A stretch of DNA of 64,000 nucleotides from IMG/VR virus record IMGVR_UViG_3300043570_001980, positions 1-64,000 of that record. One strand, written 5' to 3'. The translations under genes were made by a program, and so were the position numbers. A model generated the notes under the pieces. It ran no database searches and was not told where the DNA came from. It saw nothing but the letters and a program-made list of their open reading frames with translations. Positions 56,884-64,000 of this stretch are shown here, piece by piece (within the stretch, counting starts at the first letter, position 1; each line of letters starts with the position of its first letter).

Positions 56884-57870
56884 TCAGTGTCCGCATGCAC
56901 TAACACACATATACAACTTACCCTGCGCCACACTGGGTAAAGTCCAGGTTTTTTCTACCTGTTCAAACCAATCAATACAATGCTCTAGACTGTATTCTAA
57001 TGCATTGTTTTCTTTAACTAAATCTTTAAATTGACTATTACCGGGCTGGTGCATTGTCTTTGGAAAAAATCCCAAATAACAACAAGGATACACAGATCCG
57101 TCGGCAGCTATGTAAATCTCTTTTTGTTTTATATGGCCACAATCTATTTGTGCATTATCATCAACCCAGGGTATTTTCTTTTTATGATCAAACCAGGTAA
57201 CATGATCTTCAATCAAATTGTTAGCGTCGGGTATGTCAGGTTGTGCATCACCTAGCCAATGACTAAACTCGCCGTTTCTTGTAAATACCGGTCCTTGGTT
57301 ACGTCCGTGATCTCGTACTATAAAATCTGAAAATCCCAACTGACGGCTCAGTGTCTGACAACTATCAAATTGATGTTGATTATGTTTAAACGGGATAAAT
57401 TTCCAAACAGCATTTCCGCCTGCCTGGATTAATGCCACAGCATTATCGATGATCTTCTCCCAGTCAGTGTCCTGACGGTACAGACTGTGTGTGTCTTTGA
57501 GCCCGTCTAATGCAAATAATACTTCAATTCGATGGTTGTTTAATTTCTGCCACCAGGCAGTAGAACGTGTACTGCCATTTGTTTCAATTTGTATTTTGGC
57601 AGTACTATTAGATAAAAAGTACTCGACTATTTCCAACGCATCGCTGGCCAAACTAAAATCTCCAAGATTTCCGTTAAAGTTAATACGGTTAATTTGTTTT
57701 AAAAAGTCTGAAGGGAATATGTGTTGAATATCACTAAGTGACAACTCAGTTAACGGATATCCTCCATTAAAATCTACGCCTCGGTAGTTACGCATACACA
57801 TGGGACATCGTGCATTACAACGAGAACTAAGTTCAATATGTAATGCACGGATTTGGTCTATTTTAATCAT
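56884..57870 (-). CDS. Radical SAM protein with SPASM/twitch-type Cys motif
   Basis: CNARCPMC; C-terminal C...DGSVYPCC...C...CG; TATAAATA 5 nt upstream. Confidence 0.9.
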   Translation of the reverse strand: MIKIDQIRALHIELSSRCNARCPMCMRNYRGVDFNGGYPLTELSLSDIQHIFPSDFLKQINRINFNGNLGDFSLASDALEIVEYFLSNSTAKIQIETNGSTRSTAWWQKLNNHRIEVLFALDGLKDTHSLYRQDTDWEKIIDNAVALIQAGGNAVWKFIPFKHNQHQFDSCQTLSRQLGFSDFIVRDHGRNQGPVFTRNGEFSHWLGDAQPDIPDANNLIEDHVTWFDHKKKIPWVDDNAQIDCGHIKQKEIYIAADGSVYPCCYLGFFPKTMHQPGNSQFKDLVKENNALEYSLEHCIDWFEQVEKTWTLPSVAQGKLYMCVSACGH

Positions 57871-57906: not shown

Positions 57907-58659
57907 TTATTGATATAATCGCAATACCTCTCCAATTATAGGATGTCTTTGAATGTCACGACCGGTCATCCTGCACACAGCCATACCGTTGATGGGTCTT
58001 GCTTCTAATTTTAAGCACAGATCCAACAACCCATTGTTATCTTGTTGACGGTCTGCTTGTTCCACATCTCCAGTGACCACAATACGACTGCCTGTGCCTA
58101 TGCGGCTTAACAGCATCTTCATTTGTGCAGGAGTAGCGTTTTGCATTTCGTCTGCAACAATCCAAGCATGCTTGAACGTGCGTCCACGCATGTAGGCCAA
58201 GGGTGAGATTTCAATGGTGCCGTCTTCAATCATTGCAGTGATCTCTGTGGGTCGGTAGTACTCACGCAGTACATCAAGCAGGGGTCGTGTCCAGGGTTCC
58301 ATTTTGGCCACTAGATTGCCGGGTAAAAAGCCATGTTGTTCATCCTCCACGCCTATGGCGGGACGAGTTAGAACAATACGCTTGGCTTCTCCACTTCTAA
58401 ATGCTTTGACCGCTGCCAGCATAGCCAGATAAGTTTTACCAGTTCCTGCTGGACCTGCTGTTACTATGATGTGCTGATCTGCGTCGAGTAAATTTAATAT
58501 AAGATTTTCTTGATTTTTAGTTTTGGGTATAAGTTCTATTGCTCGTTGTTTTAAGTTGGGTTGTAAGTTAAATTGAATGGTATTTTCAGTAACTGTTTGG
58601 ATGCGTTTTTGCGCCTTGGCGCCTCGGTTTCTACTCAAGTTCGGTTCTCCTTTGAACAT
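57907..58659 (-). CDS. phoH: PhoH-like ATPase
   Basis: GPAGTGKT, LTRP, GFLPG, PLAYMRGRTF, DEMQN, GDVEQ.D; alternative TTG start at 58638. Confidence 0.95.
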   Translation of the reverse strand: MFKGEPNLSRNRGAKAQKRIQTVTENTIQFNLQPNLKQRAIELIPKTKNQENLILNLLDADQHIIVTAGPAGTGKTYLAMLAAVKAFRSGEAKRIVLTRPAIGVEDEQHGFLPGNLVAKMEPWTRPLLDVLREYYRPTEITAMIEDGTIEISPLAYMRGRTFKHAWIVADEMQNATPAQMKMLLSRIGTGSRIVVTGDVEQADRQQDNNGLLDLCLKLEARPINGMAVCRMTGRDIQRHPIIGEVLRLYQ

Positions 58660-58814: not shown

Positions 58815-59420
58815 ATGAGCAATAAACTTGATAAAGATATCTTTAAAGACCACAGTGATTACTGGCTGGTAGCCGACAATATTAAAAACATCTACATGTC
58901 TGAAGGTAGCTTGTTGAGCCTATTAGACTTTGAACGTGTGCTAGATGAGCTAGATATCTATGCATTTAAAAATTGGATTTTGGGTGAACTAGTACAAGGT
59001 CCAACTATCGGAAAATACAAAGTTGGCTGTATTTTTATGTGGCCTGAAAAACTCATGCCCGACCCGCGTGGGGCTCGTCGTTTACTTCCCTTCGACTGCG
59101 AAGTAAAATACATGAAGAAAAACATGAAGATTCCAATTAAAATTGAGGAACCTGATGATTTTATCCCTGGCACACACAAAGCAAGATTAATCGATAAAAA
59201 AGTATGGCTGGTTGAAATAGTCATGCCCAAGACATTGATGACCGATATTCGCACAGGCTCTATTGAGATGGAAGGCGAACAAATTGACCTACAAGATCTA
59301 GACAGCGCCTACGAAGAAGATCTAGATCAAGATGAATTCCGTCAGGAAGACACACCAGAACAATCTGCACAACAACCAGCAATTGGAGGACAAGATGCAC
59401 AACAACCAGCCGCTGTTTGA
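58815..59420 (+). CDS. Hypothetical late protein, acidic C-terminus
   Basis: TAAATA 5 nt upstream of the ATG. Confidence 0.75.
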   Translation: MSNKLDKDIFKDHSDYWLVADNIKNIYMSEGSLLSLLDFERVLDELDIYAFKNWILGELVQGPTIGKYKVGCIFMWPEKLMPDPRGARRLLPFDCEVKYMKKNMKIPIKIEEPDDFIPGTHKARLIDKKVWLVEIVMPKTLMTDIRTGSIEMEGEQIDLQDLDSAYEEDLDQDEFRQEDTPEQSAQQPAIGGQDAQQPAAV

Positions 59421-59937
59421 AGGTCTTGAATACAAGGACCTAGAGGGCATGATGAAGCCCACGATTCACGTTGACGAATTTGCTAGTAAAATGGGCGACG
59501 ACGACGAAATTATTGTACTAAGCTTTTTTGTTCGCAGTAAACAGGCCGCAAAGGATCTTGTGAATTGGTTCGAAAAAGGATACGACTTTGTGTTGGATTC
59601 TGACACCAGTCCTGGAGAAATCAAGGCAGGCAGATATCTTGTGTATGTAGAAATGCGCAGACGCAGTACTTCAGGCAAGCACACAGCAGAATTAATCGAC
59701 GATTTAAGCACACTCACTGAGTTTGGTCCCGACGATTGGACCATGCGCTACGAAGAGAAAGAGCACCCTTTTACTCAAGAAATATTTGACAGTTTGGTTC
59801 CGCTAAGTCCTAAACTGTATCGCAAAGAAAAAGAGTCAGAGCTAAACGAAATGCGCATAGCCGCAGGCATCCAACCAAAACAAATTTTTGAACGCGAAAA
59901 AGATATTCGCAGTCTACAGGCCGCCGCAGGTATATAA
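59395..59937 (+). CDS. Hypothetical protein
   Basis: GGAGGA SD; IHVDEFASKMGDD. Confidence 0.75.
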   Translation: MHNNQPLFEGLEYKDLEGMMKPTIHVDEFASKMGDDDEIIVLSFFVRSKQAAKDLVNWFEKGYDFVLDSDTSPGEIKAGRYLVYVEMRRRSTSGKHTAELIDDLSTLTEFGPDDWTMRYEEKEHPFTQEIFDSLVPLSPKLYRKEKESELNEMRIAAGIQPKQIFEREKDIRSLQAAAGI

Positions 59938-59945
59938 CTATACCT

Positions 59946-60587
59946 ATGAAACTCAAAAGCTTTGGGTGCAGTTTCATTTTTGGAACAGATTTATCTGACG
60001 ACGGAAATGGCGCTCTTTGGGCCACACCCAGTAAACTAACCTGGCCCGCACATCTTGCTAATCATTTGGATTACCAATATATTTGTTATGCCCGTCCGGG
60101 CATTGGCAATCTCAGCATACTTGACCGTGTGTTAAATCAAGCAGGCTGCAATGAGCACAGCTTGTTTGTTGTTGGATGGACCTGGATTGATCGTTTTGAT
60201 CACACTGATCACAAAGACGATTGGCTAACACTACGCCCTATAGAAGAAGATACTAACTCTAAGTTTTATTTTAAAAATTTGCACTCTGAGTACAGAGATA
60301 AACTCAATACTCTGATGTGCATGCGCCTGGCCATAGACACATTAAAAGAAAAAAACTGCCCATTTATAATGACCTACATGGACGATTTGACCTTTGACAG
60401 TAAATATCATGCGCCGCCAGGAATTATGGACCTACAAAACTATGTACGCCCTTACATGACTAAGTTTGAAGATAAGAATTTCTTAGAGTGGAGTCAGGTT
60501 AAAGGCTATCCTATCAGCAATACCTTACACCCTTTAGAACAAGCTCATTTGGCTGCTTTTGATTTAATCAAAGATATCAAGGTTTAG
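59946..60587 (+). CDS. SGNH-hydrolase-like protein
   Basis: FGCSF, ARPGIGN, HPLEQAH. Confidence 0.65.
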   Translation: MKLKSFGCSFIFGTDLSDDGNGALWATPSKLTWPAHLANHLDYQYICYARPGIGNLSILDRVLNQAGCNEHSLFVVGWTWIDRFDHTDHKDDWLTLRPIEEDTNSKFYFKNLHSEYRDKLNTLMCMRLAIDTLKEKNCPFIMTYMDDLTFDSKYHAPPGIMDLQNYVRPYMTKFEDKNFLEWSQVKGYPISNTLHPLEQAHLAAFDLIKDIKV

Positions 60588-61311
60588 AATACACAAAGTA
60601 CAGTCTATCGTTGGCATCCTTTTTAAACTCTAATAGCTTAAGATTGTATTTTTCAGCAAACTCGTTTACTACTTCAAAACTCCACGGAAAGATTTCTACG
60701 TAAGGTCCTGTCTTGTGCGTGATACCAGGATTGGCTCTTAGATAAAATTTACCGCCTCTGGCTAACAAATCAACACAGTGGCCAAAACGACTTTCGATTT
60801 CGTCTCGGCTATTAAAGTTAATTGATCCTAGTGCAATAATGTGATCGTGGCTAGCAGGTTTAACCTTGTAGTCAAGGATGTCTACCATGTAATCAGCACA
60901 GTTGTTATAAGGATCAATGCCTACTAGGTTATCGATGCGTCCTTTAAACGGATGATATCCACAGCCTACGTCTAACACACTTTTGGGATTTTGCTTTTGA
61001 ATTTCTTCAGCTAGTTGCCATCCTGTATAATCGTAGTCCCCGGTTCTGGGTTTCCAGATTTCTCCAAAGAAGCGATTGATATAACGCTCGCTGAGATCAT
61101 TGGTGATACTGAGTAATGTACCTACATAATCGCAAGGCAAGCTTAGTTCTACTTCCACAGCGTCTTTGAACTTTCTATAACGTGCAGGAGTCCAAGGAAG
61201 TTTGTCAACTTCAGTGTTTGGTCCAATAGTTTCAAGAATTCTCTGATACTTGGGTAAATTAAAAGCAGTCTGCAAATTTTTGTTGAGTAAGTTAAAAATT
61301 TTGGTATTCAT
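60577..61311 (-). CDS. Class I SAM-dependent methyltransferase
   Basis: VLDVGCG, VGIDP, HIIALGSINF; separate N-terminal domain of about 75 aa. Confidence 0.85.
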   Translation of the reverse strand: MNTKIFNLLNKNLQTAFNLPKYQRILETIGPNTEVDKLPWTPARYRKFKDAVEVELSLPCDYVGTLLSITNDLSERYINRFFGEIWKPRTGDYDYTGWQLAEEIQKQNPKSVLDVGCGYHPFKGRIDNLVGIDPYNNCADYMVDILDYKVKPASHDHIIALGSINFNSRDEIESRFGHCVDLLARGGKFYLRANPGITHKTGPYVEIFPWSFEVVNEFAEKYNLKLLEFKKDANDRLYFVYSKP

Positions 61312-61404
61312 ATAAAATTTTACCTTTAGGATAAATAATTTTACAAGACCTGTAAAAATTTTCCTGGTCTTGTTTTTTTAATTAAGTATATTTAAGGAGA
61401 TAAT

Positions 61405-62391
61405 ATGAGTACATTAAAAAAGTTTATAGCCGCATTACTTGTTACTGCAAGTACACTAGTTTACGCATGGGAACCAACCAAACCCGTTACTGTATACATA
61501 GGTAACACACCCGGTGCAGGTAATGAAATGGCCTTTAGAAAACTAGCTGATATTGTACAGAAACAAAACCCAAAGTTTGTGTATGTTGTACAAAACATTC
61601 CTGGAGCAGATAGTGTTATTGCCAACAACCGTTTTTTAGAAGCGCCAAATGACGGCTATACTATTAACTTGCCTAGTCATATGAGCAGTTATGTTACAAA
61701 TGATATCTGGGAAAAGTCAATTAAGAAATACAACTACGACTCATTTGTTGATGTGTTGACCATGGGCAAGAGCCCGTTGGTATTGGTTGCTGGCGTCAAA
61801 AGCGGCATTAACACCCCACAAGAGTTTGTGAAGTATATTCAGTCAGGCAGAACAATCAACATTGCCATTGGTGGTGGCGCACATCGCACAGCATTTGAGT
61901 ATTTGATGGACAAGGGCAAGGGCAACAAAGACACAGTCAAACCCATCAAGTTTAACGGACCACAGCCTGCAGTACAAAGTGCCGCTAGCTTTGATCCAAA
62001 ATTTGCTGGCACTGAGTTTGCTATTATTCCTATTGCAGTGGCCAAAGCTCTAGTTGATGCAGGCAAGGTAAAACCCATTGGATTTACAGGCACACGTCGG
62101 ATGGCACAATTTCCTGATGTCCCATTGTTAAACACAGTAGCGCCTGGTATCAATGTGTATGCGGCCTGGTCAATACAATTGCCGCCTGGCACAGACAAGG
62201 ACATTGTTGCATGGTATCAACAGCAATTCAGCAAGGCTATTCGTTCAGCAGAATACAAAGAGTACACGGATGCCAATGTTATTTTCTATGCTGAAGATGA
62301 GTTGACTCCTGTCGGGCTTCGAAAGCAAATGGACGAATTACGTGCGGCATTTATTCCTGTGTTGAGTCGAATTGATTTAAGTAAAGAATGA
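61405..62391 (+). CDS. Bug/TctC-family periplasmic solute receptor
   Basis: Signal peptide; P.KPV..Y...PG, N.PGA, A.NDGYT, VKPIG.TG.RR..FPDVP, W.....P.GT.K.IV. Confidence 0.85.
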   Translation: MSTLKKFIAALLVTASTLVYAWEPTKPVTVYIGNTPGAGNEMAFRKLADIVQKQNPKFVYVVQNIPGADSVIANNRFLEAPNDGYTINLPSHMSSYVTNDIWEKSIKKYNYDSFVDVLTMGKSPLVLVAGVKSGINTPQEFVKYIQSGRTINIAIGGGAHRTAFEYLMDKGKGNKDTVKPIKFNGPQPAVQSAASFDPKFAGTEFAIIPIAVAKALVDAGKVKPIGFTGTRRMAQFPDVPLLNTVAPGINVYAAWSIQLPPGTDKDIVAWYQQQFSKAIRSAEYKEYTDANVIFYAEDELTPVGLRKQMDELRAAFIPVLSRIDLSKE

Positions 62392-63020
62392 AATACATAT
62401 TCGTAGCCGGTGCTCCAGGCTCAAAATGGAGTAGCGTAGTTAAAAACATCTACTACAGCGCAGACATTGATCGTAGCGACTATAGAGATGAGTGGACTTA
62501 TTATCACGACGCTGGCGATACTGGGGTTAAAGAACTAATGCATTTGGGTGCATACTTTGACCCCGGCATGATCTCTCCATTGCCCGAAGATTTAACCGCA
62601 TTGAATCGAGAACAACTGGAAAAAATATTTGCAGAACCCTTTCAATTCAAAGAATCCAAAGGTACACGAATTATCAAAAGCCATGTGTTTTCCAATCATA
62701 TTGAACATTTGCGAGAATTATTCCCTGAAACGCCTGTTGTAATTGTACATCGTGGCGATGATTCATGTCTGGGCTGGTGGGTCAAGTGTGGGCATTTTGA
62801 CATCACTTACCCTGACTATCACGAGTATTTCAAAGACTTAAAACACATGGCTCGGATTATCAAAAGTCAAAATCGAGACATCCTGAAAGCCTGGTGGAAG
62901 TACACTGGTAAAATAGTGTCAGACAATGTTCAATTGGCACAAGCACTAAACATTGAACTCCCGCCTGTGGAATATTCTCAAGACTATGCAACATCAGACG
63001 TAAGGGTAAAAGTAATATGA
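62388..63020 (+). CDS. P-loop/sulfotransferase-like protein
   Basis: IFVAGAPGSKWS; IIKSH; VIVHR. Confidence 0.55.
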   Translation: MKYIFVAGAPGSKWSSVVKNIYYSADIDRSDYRDEWTYYHDAGDTGVKELMHLGAYFDPGMISPLPEDLTALNREQLEKIFAEPFQFKESKGTRIIKSHVFSNHIEHLRELFPETPVVIVHRGDDSCLGWWVKCGHFDITYPDYHEYFKDLKHMARIIKSQNRDILKAWWKYTGKIVSDNVQLAQALNIELPPVEYSQDYATSDVRVKVI

Positions 63021-63679
63021 TAACAGAAGAATTCAAAAGCAGTTGGGATTACACAAAGAGTTATAGCACATATCATTTTGACAGCGTCAAAATAGATCGA
63101 TTCAAAGATGTAATCACCCATCTAGGACATATCGAACCCACATGGACAGCAGACATAGCAGACATTGTGGCCAACTCTAATCCAGCAACCTGGGAAACTC
63201 GCGGCTACAAAGGTGAAGGTGTTCCTCCTCCGCGTGAAGATTTGTTAGCAGAAGAATACGACATTGAACGTGTGGGTGCAGATCCCAAAATGATCATTAC
63301 TCACATTAACTGGCGTATTCCCGCTTCGTTGCAAGCAATTACCGCGGCATTTGGCCTTGATGATTGCATGGAACGCATACATGTACAACAACCTGGAGAA
63401 GTGTGGAACTTACACATAGACAAACTGCAGAAATGGTGCCCAGAAGATCCGTCAAAGATAGGACGTTATTTTGTACAATTAACAGACTGGCAACCAGGAC
63501 AGTTTTGGGAATATGGGAACTATCACTGGAATCAATGGCAGGCCGGCGATGTATCAACATTCGACTGGGTTAACATACCGCACTCCACAGCCAATGCAGG
63601 TCACCATCCTAGAGTGACATTTCAGTTGACTGGTGTTATCACAGATAAGACTCGCAATTTCTTATCCTCACTACAATGA
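63017..63679 (+). CDS. Fe(II)/2OG hydroxylase-like cupin
   Basis: QQPGEV..LHID...W..G....FDW..IPHSTAN.G...R (HxD...H triad). Confidence 0.75.
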   Translation: MITEEFKSSWDYTKSYSTYHFDSVKIDRFKDVITHLGHIEPTWTADIADIVANSNPATWETRGYKGEGVPPPREDLLAEEYDIERVGADPKMIITHINWRIPASLQAITAAFGLDDCMERIHVQQPGEVWNLHIDKLQKWCPEDPSKIGRYFVQLTDWQPGQFWEYGNYHWNQWQAGDVSTFDWVNIPHSTANAGHHPRVTFQLTGVITDKTRNFLSSLQ

Positions 63680-63885
63680 GCACAGACACATCAACAAGAA
63701 GTTTAGTCAAGACAATTAGTTGGCGTATAACTGGTAGCGGTGCAACTTTTGCAATATCTTATTTGGTGCTAGGTGATTTTTCTGTTGCTGGCACAATTGC
63801 AATAACTCAAGTCACACTGAATACCATATTGTATTACGTACACGAAAGAATTTGGAACAAGATTGCATGGCAAAAACACTTTTAA
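63676..63885 (+). CDS. DUF2061 membrane protein
   Basis: RSLVKTISWRITG...LYYVHERIWNKI.W. Confidence 0.85.
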   Translation: MSTDTSTRSLVKTISWRITGSGATFAISYLVLGDFSVAGTIAITQVTLNTILYYVHERIWNKIAWQKHF

Positions 63886-64000
63886 TATTAACAGGGCCGC
63901 AGGGATCCGGTAATCATTTATGGTCAAAAATCTTTGCACTACATCCCGATGTGTATGCCTGGCATGCCTTGTTACATGAATACTGGATAGGACATGATCA
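63867..64000 (+). CDS. P-loop/sulfotransferase-like protein (3'-truncated)
   Basis: MAKTLLILTGPQGSGNHLWSKIFALHP...; runs off the window. Confidence 0.6.
   Translation, partial: MAKTLLILTGPQGSGNHLWSKIFALHPDVYAWHALLHEYWIGHD

What the first reader, a model, noticed from the sequence alone, without database searches (positions are those of the whole stretch)
60577..64000. Bug/TctC receptor heading a biosynthetic-looking operon, divergent from a methyltransferase
Seen: overlapping genes for a Bug receptor, a P-loop/sulfotransferase-like protein, a 2OG hydroxylase-like protein, DUF2061 and a second P-loop-like protein, back-to-back with a two-domain methyltransferase; no TctA/B in the window. Known: Bug receptors are expanded in Burkholderiales and bind carboxylates. 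Inference: the phage imports or senses a carboxylate (e.g. 2-oxoglutarate for the hydroxylase) feeding a pathway. A binding protein coupled to tailoring enzymes is unusual for a phage.
Basis: partly seen in the sequence, partly recalled or inferred. Interest (0 to 1): 0.65.

Follow-up and report, generated by a model that had tools for sequence, protein, structure and literature searches.

The report
Phage transporter-receptor operon with sulfotransferase-like enzymes
A 342-kb uncultured jumbo phage carries a conserved operon that joins a secreted TctC-type solute receptor to virus-specific sulfotransferase-like, oxygenase, methyltransferase and APS-kinase-like enzymes, and distant viral relatives place the same enzymes beside their own TctA permease, so the phage probably imports a small organic acid and modifies it.

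Summary
Window 60577-64000 holds a divergent SAM methyltransferase, a TctC/Bug receptor (Pfam 76 bits, Sec signal peptide, strong RBS), then a sulfotransferase-fold protein (ST1), a 2OG/Fe(II) oxygenase (invariant HxD...H), DUF2061 and the start of a second sulfotransferase-like protein (ST2); the first four operon genes are joined by 4-bp overlaps.

The window is the start of a 341,990-bp PA5oct-like jumbo phage. Past the window the operon continues with an APS-kinase-like/nucleotidyltransferase fusion, an SGNH-like protein and a Stf0-like sulfotransferase, and ends at the lysis genes.

The core is kept in 61 related viral loci while the flanks change. Of 56 loci with room to judge, MT is present in 55, ST2 in 54, the oxygenase in 52 and ST1 in 49.

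No TctA or TctB is present in this genome, and no TctA in five relatives that are 95-100% complete.

New evidence for coupling: in distant viral contigs ST1 is fused to this same methyltransferase. In four of six contexts read, that fusion lies next to a virus-borne TctA, with a Bug-like or DctP receptor.

The ligand, the product, the 2-oxoglutarate guess and the Burkholderiales hint are not shown. Sulfation with PAPS is my best inference for the chemistry.

The parts
59946..60587 (+). SGNH/GDSL-like protein (213 aa), convergent with and overlapping the 3' end of the methyltransferase gene; accessory part of the module
   Evidence: The translation shows an N-terminal GCSF block and a C-terminal HP...H block. 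There is no Pfam hit. Homologs lie beside the module in 27 of 56 loci. The SGNH assignment rests on motifs read by eye only.
60577..61311 (-). Two-part class I SAM-dependent methyltransferase (244 aa), transcribed divergently from the TctC operon
   Evidence: It carries motif I (VLDVGCG), GIDP and ALGSI. The N-terminal extension of about 90 aa is absent from shorter paralogs. The best PDB profile hits are phosphoethanolamine N-methyltransferases, 26.8 bits. It is present in 55 of 56 loci. It is homologous to the C-terminal domain of ST1-MT fusion proteins (hhalign probability 100%).
61312..61404 (.). 93-bp AT-rich divergent intergenic region with an 8-bp hairpin plus T-run (61343-61379) and the TctC ribosome-binding site AAGGAG (61394-61399)
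   Evidence: Read directly from the sequence. The consensus promoter scan of the region was no better than shuffled sequence. A regulatory role was not tested.
61405..62391 (+). TctC/Bug-family periplasmic solute-binding protein (328 aa) with a Sec signal peptide; an orphan, since the phage has no TctA or TctB
   Evidence: PF03401 scores 76 bits. PDB profile hits to TTT binding proteins, BugD, Bug27 and TphC reach E 1e-12 to 1e-7. The signal peptide is visible. It is the most conserved gene of the module, with mean column identity 76%. There are 2302 relatives with E <= 1e-5 in metagenomes, and the best 120 listed are 84-95% identical. TctA and TctB are absent.
62388..63020 (+). ST1: member of a sulfotransferase-fold family found so far only in viral sequences (210 aa)
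   Evidence: The AF2 model has pLDDT 87. The top VIA matches are TPST1/2 at Z 10.1-10.6, with mixed kinases and sulfotransferases at Z 8.3 and below. Sulfotransfer_3 gives E 6e-4, or 1.2e-4 in the six-frame search. K97-S98-H99 and R122 are conserved. The family has 370 clusters at 50% identity. None was found in 401 sampled Pseudomonadota genomes.
63017..63679 (+). 2OG/Fe(II)-dependent oxygenase of the prolyl/proline-hydroxylase-like kind (220 aa)
   Evidence: The AF2 model has pLDDT 84. Foldseek gives E 1e-5 with probability 1.0 to SptF, P4H and proline hydroxylases. VIA gives proline 3-hydroxylase Z 11.3, PiuC 10.8 and cis-4-hydroxylase 10.4, and all 50 rows are 2OG oxygenases. H133-x-D135...H189 and R199 are invariant.
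63676..63885 (+). DUF2061 small predicted membrane protein (69 aa); a variable part of the module
   Evidence: PF09834 scores 74.5 bits. It is present in 13 of 56 loci, and in two of them it lies directly upstream of TctC.
63867..64000 (+). N-terminus of ST2 (209 aa, ending at genome position 64496): second P-loop-like, sulfotransferase-like protein
   Evidence: GPQGSGNH, R109 and D110 are invariant. There is no Pfam or PDB sequence match. Language-model neighbours include sulfotransferase clusters at 0.94. It is present in 54 of 56 loci. The fold was not predicted.

Best explanation
This is a virus-specific 'take up and modify' module.

The TctC-family protein is exported to the periplasm of the infected Gram-negative host. 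There it captures a small anionic organic solute and delivers it to a TTT membrane permease. In this phage clade that permease must be the host's. In distant viral relatives it is phage-encoded.

The genes translationally coupled to TctC then modify the solute in the cytoplasm:
- the 2OG/Fe(II) oxygenase hydroxylates it;
- ST1, ST2 and, where present, the Stf0-like protein transfer a sulfuryl group;
- the divergently transcribed methyltransferase methylates it;
- the APS-kinase-like/nucleotidyltransferase fusion supplies the activated 3'-phosphoadenylyl donor, most simply PAPS made from host APS.

Shown: gene identities at fold or family level, conservation of the operon, the orphan state of TctC, the ST1-MT fusion, and its adjacency to TctA elsewhere.

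Inferred: that TctC works with a host permease, that the enzymes act on the imported solute, that the chemistry is sulfation with PAPS, and what the phage gains from it.
For: 1. Family and fold assignments:
- TctC.
- 2OG oxygenase.
- ST1 sulfotransferase fold with KSH and R122.
- ST2 and the Stf0-like protein, by language-model neighbours only.
- Kinase domain: best matches are APS kinases, PF01583 at 43.8 bits (above its cut-off) and 2yvu at E 2e-10, including the FS..R substrate-loop region.

2. Operon structure: 4-bp overlaps and a strong RBS. The TctC-ST1 junction is within 2 bp in 48 of 52 loci.

3. The module persists while its flanks change. MT is present in 55, ST2 in 54, the oxygenase in 52 and ST1 in 49 of 56 loci, against PhoH in 38 and GH19 in 32. 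It is also present at 42% TctC identity in L070.

4. Rosetta-stone fusion: ST1 is fused to the module's own MT in 6 of 8 long representatives.

5. That fusion lies next to TctA plus a Bug-like receptor in L073, L074 and L078. In L075 it lies next to DctP, a 2OG oxygenase and TctA.

6. Relatives add further orphan receptors (a second TctC-like protein and DctP) to the same module.

7. TctC is the most conserved gene of the module, so it is under strong selection.
Against: - No ligand, product or host is known.
- ST1 and ST2 lack the canonical 5'-phosphosulfate loop ([KR]-x-G-[ST]-[ST]). ST1 scores below Pfam's cut-off, and P-loop kinases follow at Z about 8, so a kinase-like activity is not excluded.
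- ST1, ST2 and the Stf0-like protein show no profile similarity to each other.
- The APS-kinase match covers only residues 5-92, LDGD reads LNAD, and the NCBIfam cut-offs are not reached.
- The phage has no ATP sulfurylase or CysD.
- The kinase is absent from 18 of 56 loci.
- The nucleotidyltransferase half looks most like NadM-type NMN adenylyltransferase.
- Adjacency alone cannot show that the enzymes use the imported solute.
- The two MAGs that contain such phage contigs hold no TctA.
Confidence: 0.45

Rival explanations
1. Two unrelated functions lie side by side. TctC, like the DctP and extra TctC-like genes of relatives, is a stand-alone nutrient-scavenging gene that plugs into the host's TTT permease, as cyanophage PstS does with host PstCA. 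The neighbouring enzymes modify something else, for example cell-envelope glycans or virion components, by sulfation, methylation, hydroxylation and (de)acylation by the SGNH proteins.
For: - The module lies between virion structural genes and the lysis cassette.
- Two SGNH-like proteins and a Stf0-like sulfotransferase are typical glycan-decorating enzymes.
- Several orphan receptors gather in this region in relatives.
- The PstS analogy rests on established knowledge, not on a test made here.
Against: - The TctC-ST1 overlap of 4 bp is kept in most loci.
- ST1-MT lies beside TctA and a receptor in four independent distant contigs whose other neighbours differ. This is hard to explain without a functional link.
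Confidence: 0.25
2. A protein- or peptide-modifying system. ST1 sulfates tyrosine as TPST and RaxST do, the oxygenase hydroxylates proline, and the MT methylates. The target would be a phage or host protein or a small peptide, and nearby radical SAM/SPASM enzymes would belong to the same system. TctC would be either a target or a periplasmic receptor for the modified product.
For: - ST1's best structural matches are tyrosylprotein sulfotransferases.
- The oxygenase resembles protein prolyl hydroxylases as well as free-proline hydroxylases.
- Radical SAM/SPASM genes recur near ST1/MT: the window gene at 56884-57870, and L074, L079 and L080.
Against: - No precursor peptide was identified.
- TTT and TRAP systems are importers, not exporters.
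- The top oxygenase matches act on free proline or pipecolate.
- A fold match at Z 10 does not fix the acceptor.
Confidence: 0.12
3. A nucleotide or NAD salvage reading. The kinase-nucleotidyltransferase fusion would be a permuted NadR-like ribosylnicotinamide kinase/NMN adenylyltransferase. ST1 and ST2 would be degenerate nucleoside/nucleotide kinases. TctC would import nicotinate or a related pyridine carboxylate, as Bug27 binds nicotinate.
For: - The C-terminal domain has the GRWQPWHAGH and ISATKIR motifs, and its best matches are NadM-type and archaeal NMN adenylyltransferases.
- ST1 also matches nucleoside kinases, including NRK1, at Z about 7.
- Bug27 is among the PDB hits of TctC. Its nicotinate ligand is from my own knowledge, not a test made here.
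Against: - The kinase half matches APS kinases far better than the NadR kinase domain (43.8 against 17.3 bits).
- No NadV/NAPRTase is present in the genome.
- The nucleotidyltransferase half is missing in five loci that keep the kinase.
- Sulfotransferases outrank kinases for ST1, and the Stf0-like gene does not fit this reading.
- The oxygenase and MT have no role in NAD salvage.
Confidence: 0.08

Closest known systems
Bug/TctC receptors of tripartite tricarboxylate transporters (BugD, BugE, Bug27, TphC, AdpC, MatC)
   Same: Pfam membership, length, Sec signal peptide and the two glycine-rich binding-loop motifs. It is an orphan without adjacent TctAB, as most Bug proteins are.
   Different: It is encoded by a lytic-type jumbo phage. 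It is only distantly related to any solved member (E 1e-12 with a profile). It is translationally coupled to enzymes rather than to TctAB or a regulator. Its ligand is unknown.
Cyanophage PstS and other phage-borne binding proteins that use host membrane transporters
   Same: A phage supplies only the periplasmic binding component and would rely on the host's permease. This is inferred here from the absence of TctA in six genomes that are 95-100% complete.
   Different: The transporter class differs (a secondary TTT system, not an ABC system). The gene is embedded in an enzyme operon. Distant viral relatives carry the permease TctA themselves.
PAPS-dependent sulfation cassettes such as rhizobial NodPQ/NodH with NodS, or Xanthomonas RaxPQ/RaxST
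   Same: An APS-kinase-like donor-supply gene combined with sulfotransferase-fold enzymes and a SAM methyltransferase in one cluster.
   Different: There is no ATP sulfurylase. The kinase is fused to a small NMNAT-like nucleotidyltransferase. ST1 and ST2 lack the canonical PAPS loop. The acceptor is unknown. A solute receptor is linked instead of an exporter.
Free-proline and protein prolyl hydroxylases (2OG/Fe(II) oxygenases; 1e5r, 4p7x, 4iw3, PBCV-1 vCPH)
   Same: Double-stranded beta-helix fold, HxD...H triad and a distal Arg.
   Different: No Pfam match, 12-17% identity over the aligned parts, and no known substrate.

Membership tests
TctC/Bug solute-binding proteins (PF03401) | Sequence match above the curated family threshold over most of the domain | tested here: met
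   76 bits against a cut-off of 27, covering residues 44-288. Profile hits to 11 solved TTT binding proteins.
TctC/Bug solute-binding proteins (PF03401) | Export signal for a periplasmic location | tested here: met
   N-terminal MSTLKKFIAALLVTASTLVYA|WEP, kept in relatives. This was read by eye; no predictor was run.
TctC/Bug solute-binding proteins (PF03401) | Cognate TctA/TctB membrane components in the same genome | tested here: not met
   No TctA or TctB in the 342-kb genome. No TctA in five relatives 95-100% complete. Orphan receptors are common in the family, so this does not exclude membership.
TctC/Bug solute-binding proteins (PF03401) | Binds a carboxylate ligand | not testable with these tools
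   Needs purified protein.
PAPS-dependent sulfotransferases (ST1) | Sequence match above the family threshold | tested here: not met
   Sulfotransfer_3 scores 20.6 bits against a cut-off of 27, E 6e-4. No PDB sequence hit.
PAPS-dependent sulfotransferases (ST1) | Sulfotransferase fold | tested here: met
   TPST1/2 and tick TPST at Z 10.1-10.6 with 165 residues aligned. Other sulfotransferases and P-loop kinases follow at Z 8.3 and below. The fold is shared with kinases, so it is not decisive alone.
PAPS-dependent sulfotransferases (ST1) | Canonical 5'-phosphosulfate loop, catalytic Lys/His and 3'-phosphate Arg | tested here: inconclusive
   The loop reads GAPGSKWSS, which is not [KR]-S-G-T-T. 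K97-S98-H99 and R122 are conserved and resemble the K-T-H and R-x-P-x-D motifs of cytosolic sulfotransferases. The motif comparison is from memory, so it is a lead only.
2OG/Fe(II)-dependent oxygenases (220-aa protein) | Double-stranded beta-helix fold | tested here: met
   Foldseek probability 1.0 with 99 hits at E <= 1e-3. All 50 top VIA rows are 2OG oxygenases, best Z 11.3.
2OG/Fe(II)-dependent oxygenases (220-aa protein) | HxD/E...H iron triad and a basic residue for the 2OG C5 carboxylate | tested here: met
   H133, D135, H189 and R199 are invariant in 15 sequences down to 28% identity. Their position in the active site was not checked on coordinates.
Adenylyl-sulfate (APS) kinase, CysC (N-terminal half of the 264-aa fusion) | Family match over the whole kinase domain, with Walker A, the LDGD motif and the lid | tested here: inconclusive
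   PF01583 scores 43.8 bits, above its cut-off of 21.1, but covers only residues 5-92. NCBIfam scores 40 bits against a cut-off of 127. The best PDB matches are APS kinases. LDGD reads LNAD, and the lid region does not align.
Class I SAM-dependent methyltransferases (244-aa protein) | Rossmann-type SAM-binding motifs I-IV | tested here: met
   VLDVGCG, GIDP and ALGSI are conserved. PDB profile hits to PMT, MitM and TehB. The homologous fused domain hits Methyltransf_23 at 32 bits against a cut-off of 27. The window protein itself has no Pfam hit.
DUF2061 (PF09834) | Sequence match above the threshold | tested here: met
   74.5 bits against a cut-off of 23.1.

The most novel reading that the evidence does not exclude
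Large uncultured phages carry a previously undescribed, virus-only pathway built around a TTT transporter. In some lineages the set is complete (TctA plus a Bug-like receptor). In this clade it is reduced to the receptor, which takes over the host's permease. An imported organic anion would be hydroxylated, methylated and sulfated, or otherwise derivatised, by a new sulfotransferase-fold family (ST1, often fused to its methyltransferase). The donor would be a 3'-phosphoadenylyl compound made by a miniature PAPS-synthase-like kinase/nucleotidyltransferase fusion. The product would be a phage-specific metabolite with a role in infection.
Probability: 0.3. Interest if true: 0.8.

Novelty: new variant of a known kind. 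Interest (0 to 1): 0.62.

Why it matters
Phage auxiliary genes for nutrient uptake are known mainly from ABC-type phosphate receptors. I found no description of a phage TTT receptor operon, or of phage sulfotransferase/APS-kinase cassettes, in the searchable literature. The nearest was a mention of a TctA domain hit on SUP05 viral contigs (PMC4164917).

The TctC gene is very abundant in metagenomes: 2302 relatives with E <= 1e-5. The ST1 family has 370 clusters at 50% identity and looks virus-restricted.

Orphan Bug receptors are a long-standing puzzle. A compact, well-conserved phage operon that ties one receptor to a handful of enzymes offers a tractable system for finding a ligand and for asking what such receptors are for. 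If the sulfation reading holds, it would also add sulfur-group transfer to the known ways in which phages alter host metabolism.

Tried and rejected
- PDB sequence-profile searches found nothing significant for ST1, the oxygenase, ST2 or the Stf0-like protein.
- Pfam scans of all members of the ST2 and Stf0-like alignments gave nothing. PHROGs and NCBIfam gave nothing for the module genes, apart from the kinase fusion's sub-threshold NCBIfam hits and a few marginal NCBIfam matches (E 0.004-0.04) for the MT, the 109-aa and the SGNH-like proteins.
- Profile-profile comparisons among ST1, ST2 and the Stf0-like protein showed no relationship. I therefore do not call them paralogs.
- The phage GenBank collection holds no relative of the region and none of ST2. 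TctC has a single hit at 22% identity, and ST1 has two single-cell marine virus hits at about 30% identity.
- The word-based protein search for TctC returned only the phage clade itself, so it gave no cellular relatives.
- The genome-collection scan found only phage-like contigs binned into Bacteroidota MAGs and one remote Reyranella TctC. No host was identified, and the window holds no tRNA.
- The consensus promoter/terminator scan was no better than shuffled sequence.
- Complex prediction for MT with ST1 gave no verdict, with a score of 0.00. This is neither support nor evidence against binding.
- I considered a DNA-hypermodification reading (kinase plus oxygenase) and set it aside. The oxygenase matched prolyl-hydroxylase-like enzymes rather than TET/JBP, and nothing tied the module to DNA.
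- I considered a mini ATP sulfurylase role for the nucleotidyltransferase half. The only similarity is the short HxxH stretch (score -2.3), so this stays speculation.

Full report
**What is there.** The window is the first 64 kb of a 341,990-bp viral record judged 95% complete. GC is about 41%. The clamp loader is 55% identical to that of Pseudomonas jumbo phage PA5oct. No cultured phage shares the flagged region.

- A 244-aa gene lies on the minus strand at 60577-61311.
- After a 93-bp AT-rich spacer with an AAGGAG site, plus-strand genes lie at 61405-62391, 62388-63020, 63017-63679 and 63676-63885. Each of the three junctions between them is a 4-bp overlap.
- A further gene starts at 63867 and leaves the window.

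I fetched the continuation (L003). ST2 ends at genome position 64496. After it come:
- a 109-aa ORF;
- a 264-aa fusion of an APS-kinase-like domain and a small HxGH/ISxTxxR nucleotidyltransferase (64858-65652);
- a weak SGNH/GDSL-like protein (65649-66494);
- a minus-strand gene (66486-67619);
- the lysis genes: a GH19 endolysin, a LysC-like protein and a holin.

**Identities.**
- *TctC.* Membership is firm: 76 bits in Pfam and profile hits to eleven solved TTT receptors. It has a Sec-type signal peptide.
- *Oxygenase.* The 220-aa protein has no Pfam hit. Its AF2 model (pLDDT 84) matches only 2OG oxygenases and cupins, with proline 3-hydroxylase at Z 11.3, PiuC at 10.8 and proline cis-4-hydroxylase at 10.4. 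H133-x-D135, H189 and R199 are invariant down to 28% identity.
- *ST1.* The model has pLDDT 87. Foldseek found nothing significant. Exhaustive alignment puts three tyrosylprotein sulfotransferases on top at Z 10.1-10.6, about two units above a mixture of P-loop kinases and other sulfotransferases. The sub-threshold Sulfotransfer_3 hit covers the region with the conserved K-S-H and R122. The N-terminal loop GAPGSKWSS is neither a Walker A motif nor a canonical PAPS loop. I therefore call ST1 sulfotransferase-fold, with activity unproven.
- *ST2 and the minus-strand gene.* These have only language-model neighbours in sulfotransferase clusters: 0.94 for ST2, and 0.95-0.96 for the other, with Stf0 families. 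The minus-strand gene's conserved N-terminus, MNVLILTPDRVGSTLLQR, looks like a canonical loop. The public gene call cuts this N-terminus off.
- *Kinase half of the fusion.* It matches APS kinases best, with PF01583 at 43.8 bits and 2yvu at E 2e-10, through the FS..R loop. The match covers only its first 92 residues, and LDGD reads LNAD.
- *Nucleotidyltransferase half.* It is closest to NadM-type NMN adenylyltransferases. It is absent in five loci that keep the kinase.
- *MT.* It is a class I SAM enzyme with an extra N-terminal part.

**Conservation.** A scan of IMG/VR found 62 loci, many on contigs of 330-525 kb. Of these, 61 had a callable TctC ORF, and 56 had room to judge the neighbours. 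Among the 56:
- MT is present in 55, ST2 in 54, the oxygenase in 52, ST1 in 49 and the kinase in 38.
- The flanking PhoH, virion and endolysin genes are present in only 32-38.

In about a dozen loci none of the usual neighbours is within 8 kb, yet the core stays together. The TctC-ST1 junction is a 4-bp overlap in 33 of 52 loci and within 2 bp in 48. TctC is the most conserved member, with mean column identity 76% against 48-68% for the others.

The modules vary by adding paralogs of MT, ST1 and the oxygenase. Some add a class I amidotransferase/peptidase C26 and a ferritin-like protein. Notably, some add further orphan receptors: a second TctC-like protein and DctP of TRAP systems, the latter at 172 bits. 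A version at 42% TctC identity still has MT and an ST1-like gene.

**The orphan state.** TctA and TctB are absent from this genome. TctA is absent from five relatives that are 95-100% complete, one of them with terminal repeats. The genome holds a second, more typical TctC paralog at 138.5-139.5 kb, 22% identical to the first.

**The new link.** An exhaustive profile search with ST1 found 370 clusters at 50% identity. Of eight long representatives, six carry a C-terminal methyltransferase domain. In the one I compared (P0129), that domain is homologous to the module's own MT, including part of its N-terminal extension (hhalign probability 100%, 35% identity). ST1 and MT therefore act together.

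I read the genomic context of six such genes:
- L073, L074 and L078: the fusion lies directly beside a TctA gene (297 bits in L073) and a 353-357-aa secreted protein. The best solved matches of that protein are BugD and other Bug/TctC proteins.
- L075: the fusion lies three genes from TctA, which is preceded by a DctP receptor and a 2OG oxygenase, on a contig with phage tail genes.
- L079/L080, two marine contigs carrying the same gene: a separate MT and an ST1-like gene lie among radical SAM/SPASM genes, with no TctA in view.
- L077 and L076 were too short to judge.

ST1 was not found in 401 sampled Pseudomonadota genomes, while the positive control matched. Its structural neighbours in the ESM Atlas are all viral.

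**Interpretation.** Three observations together say that the TTT component and the ST1/MT/oxygenase enzymes form one functional unit rather than a chance neighbourhood: the operon structure, its persistence through rearrangement, and the independent recurrence of TTT components next to ST1-MT in remote viruses.

The simplest mechanism is uptake of a small anionic solute followed by hydroxylation, methylation and sulfuryl transfer, with the kinase fusion providing PAPS from host APS. I put this at 0.45.

The weakest links are:
- the chemistry, because the PAPS loops are non-canonical, the APS-kinase match is partial, and there is no ATP sulfurylase;
- the assumption that the enzymes act on the imported molecule.

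The rivals are an independent scavenging receptor next to envelope- or virion-decorating enzymes (0.25), a protein/peptide modification system (0.12) and an NAD/nucleotide salvage reading (0.08). The remainder is unassigned.

**What I could not do.**
- The host is unknown. The only cellular records with such contigs are Flavobacterium and Haliscomenobacter MAGs that lack TctA. This is probably mis-binning.
- Expression data could not be obtained.
- The complex prediction for MT with ST1 gave no verdict.
- The searchable literature holds no description of such a module.

**Verdict.** This is a new variant of the known theme of phage-borne transporter components: well conserved, abundant and experimentally tractable.

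Noticed in passing
G000 138541-139476 (L004:8541-9476), with the next gene at L004:9473-10642: A second, more typical TctC paralog (109 bits, 22% identical to the first, with its own signal peptide). It is followed, with a 4-bp overlap, by a 389-aa protein carrying a PP-loop-like SGGSDS motif. A DUF4214 protein and an outer-membrane beta-barrel-like protein lie upstream.
   Followed up: partly
window 56884-57870 (-) and 57907-58659 (-): A radical SAM/SPASM protein and PhoH lie about 3 kb upstream of the module. Radical SAM/SPASM genes also lie near ST1/MT genes in distant contigs (L074, L079, L080), and L074 carries a 39%-identical homolog of the window's radical SAM gene.
   Followed up: partly
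L052:10552-11538, L022:11819-12700, L032:6744-8004: Related phages add other genes to the same module: DctP (TRAP) receptors, a second TctC-like receptor, and, between MT and TctC, a ferritin-like protein plus a class I glutamine amidotransferase/peptidase C26.
   Followed up: partly
L070, L071 (genome contigs): Phage contigs carrying the module are binned into Flavobacterium and Haliscomenobacter MAGs. Those MAGs hold no TctA. In L070 the ST1-like gene is split by a TAA stop.
   Followed up: partly
G000 66486-67709 (-), L003:6486-7709: The public gene call (354 aa) for the Stf0-like gene starts after the conserved N-terminal MNVLILTPDRVGSTLLQR motif. Homologs indicate a start at G000 67619, giving 377 aa.
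   Followed up: yes
window 61343-61379: An 8-bp inverted repeat (ACAAGACC/GGTCTTGT, 15-nt loop) followed by a T-run lies in the divergent intergenic region, just upstream of the TctC ribosome-binding site. It could be a regulatory element.
   Followed up: no
G000 67677-70778 (L003:7677-10778): The lysis cassette follows the module directly: a GH19 endolysin, a LysC-like protein and a 3-TM holin. A DnaJ homolog lies at L003:11177-11968.
   Followed up: no
window 58815-59937: Two overlapping 201-aa ORFs match PHROG 'virion structural protein' families (phrog_12928 and phrog_13138). The module therefore lies between structural and lysis genes.
   Followed up: no
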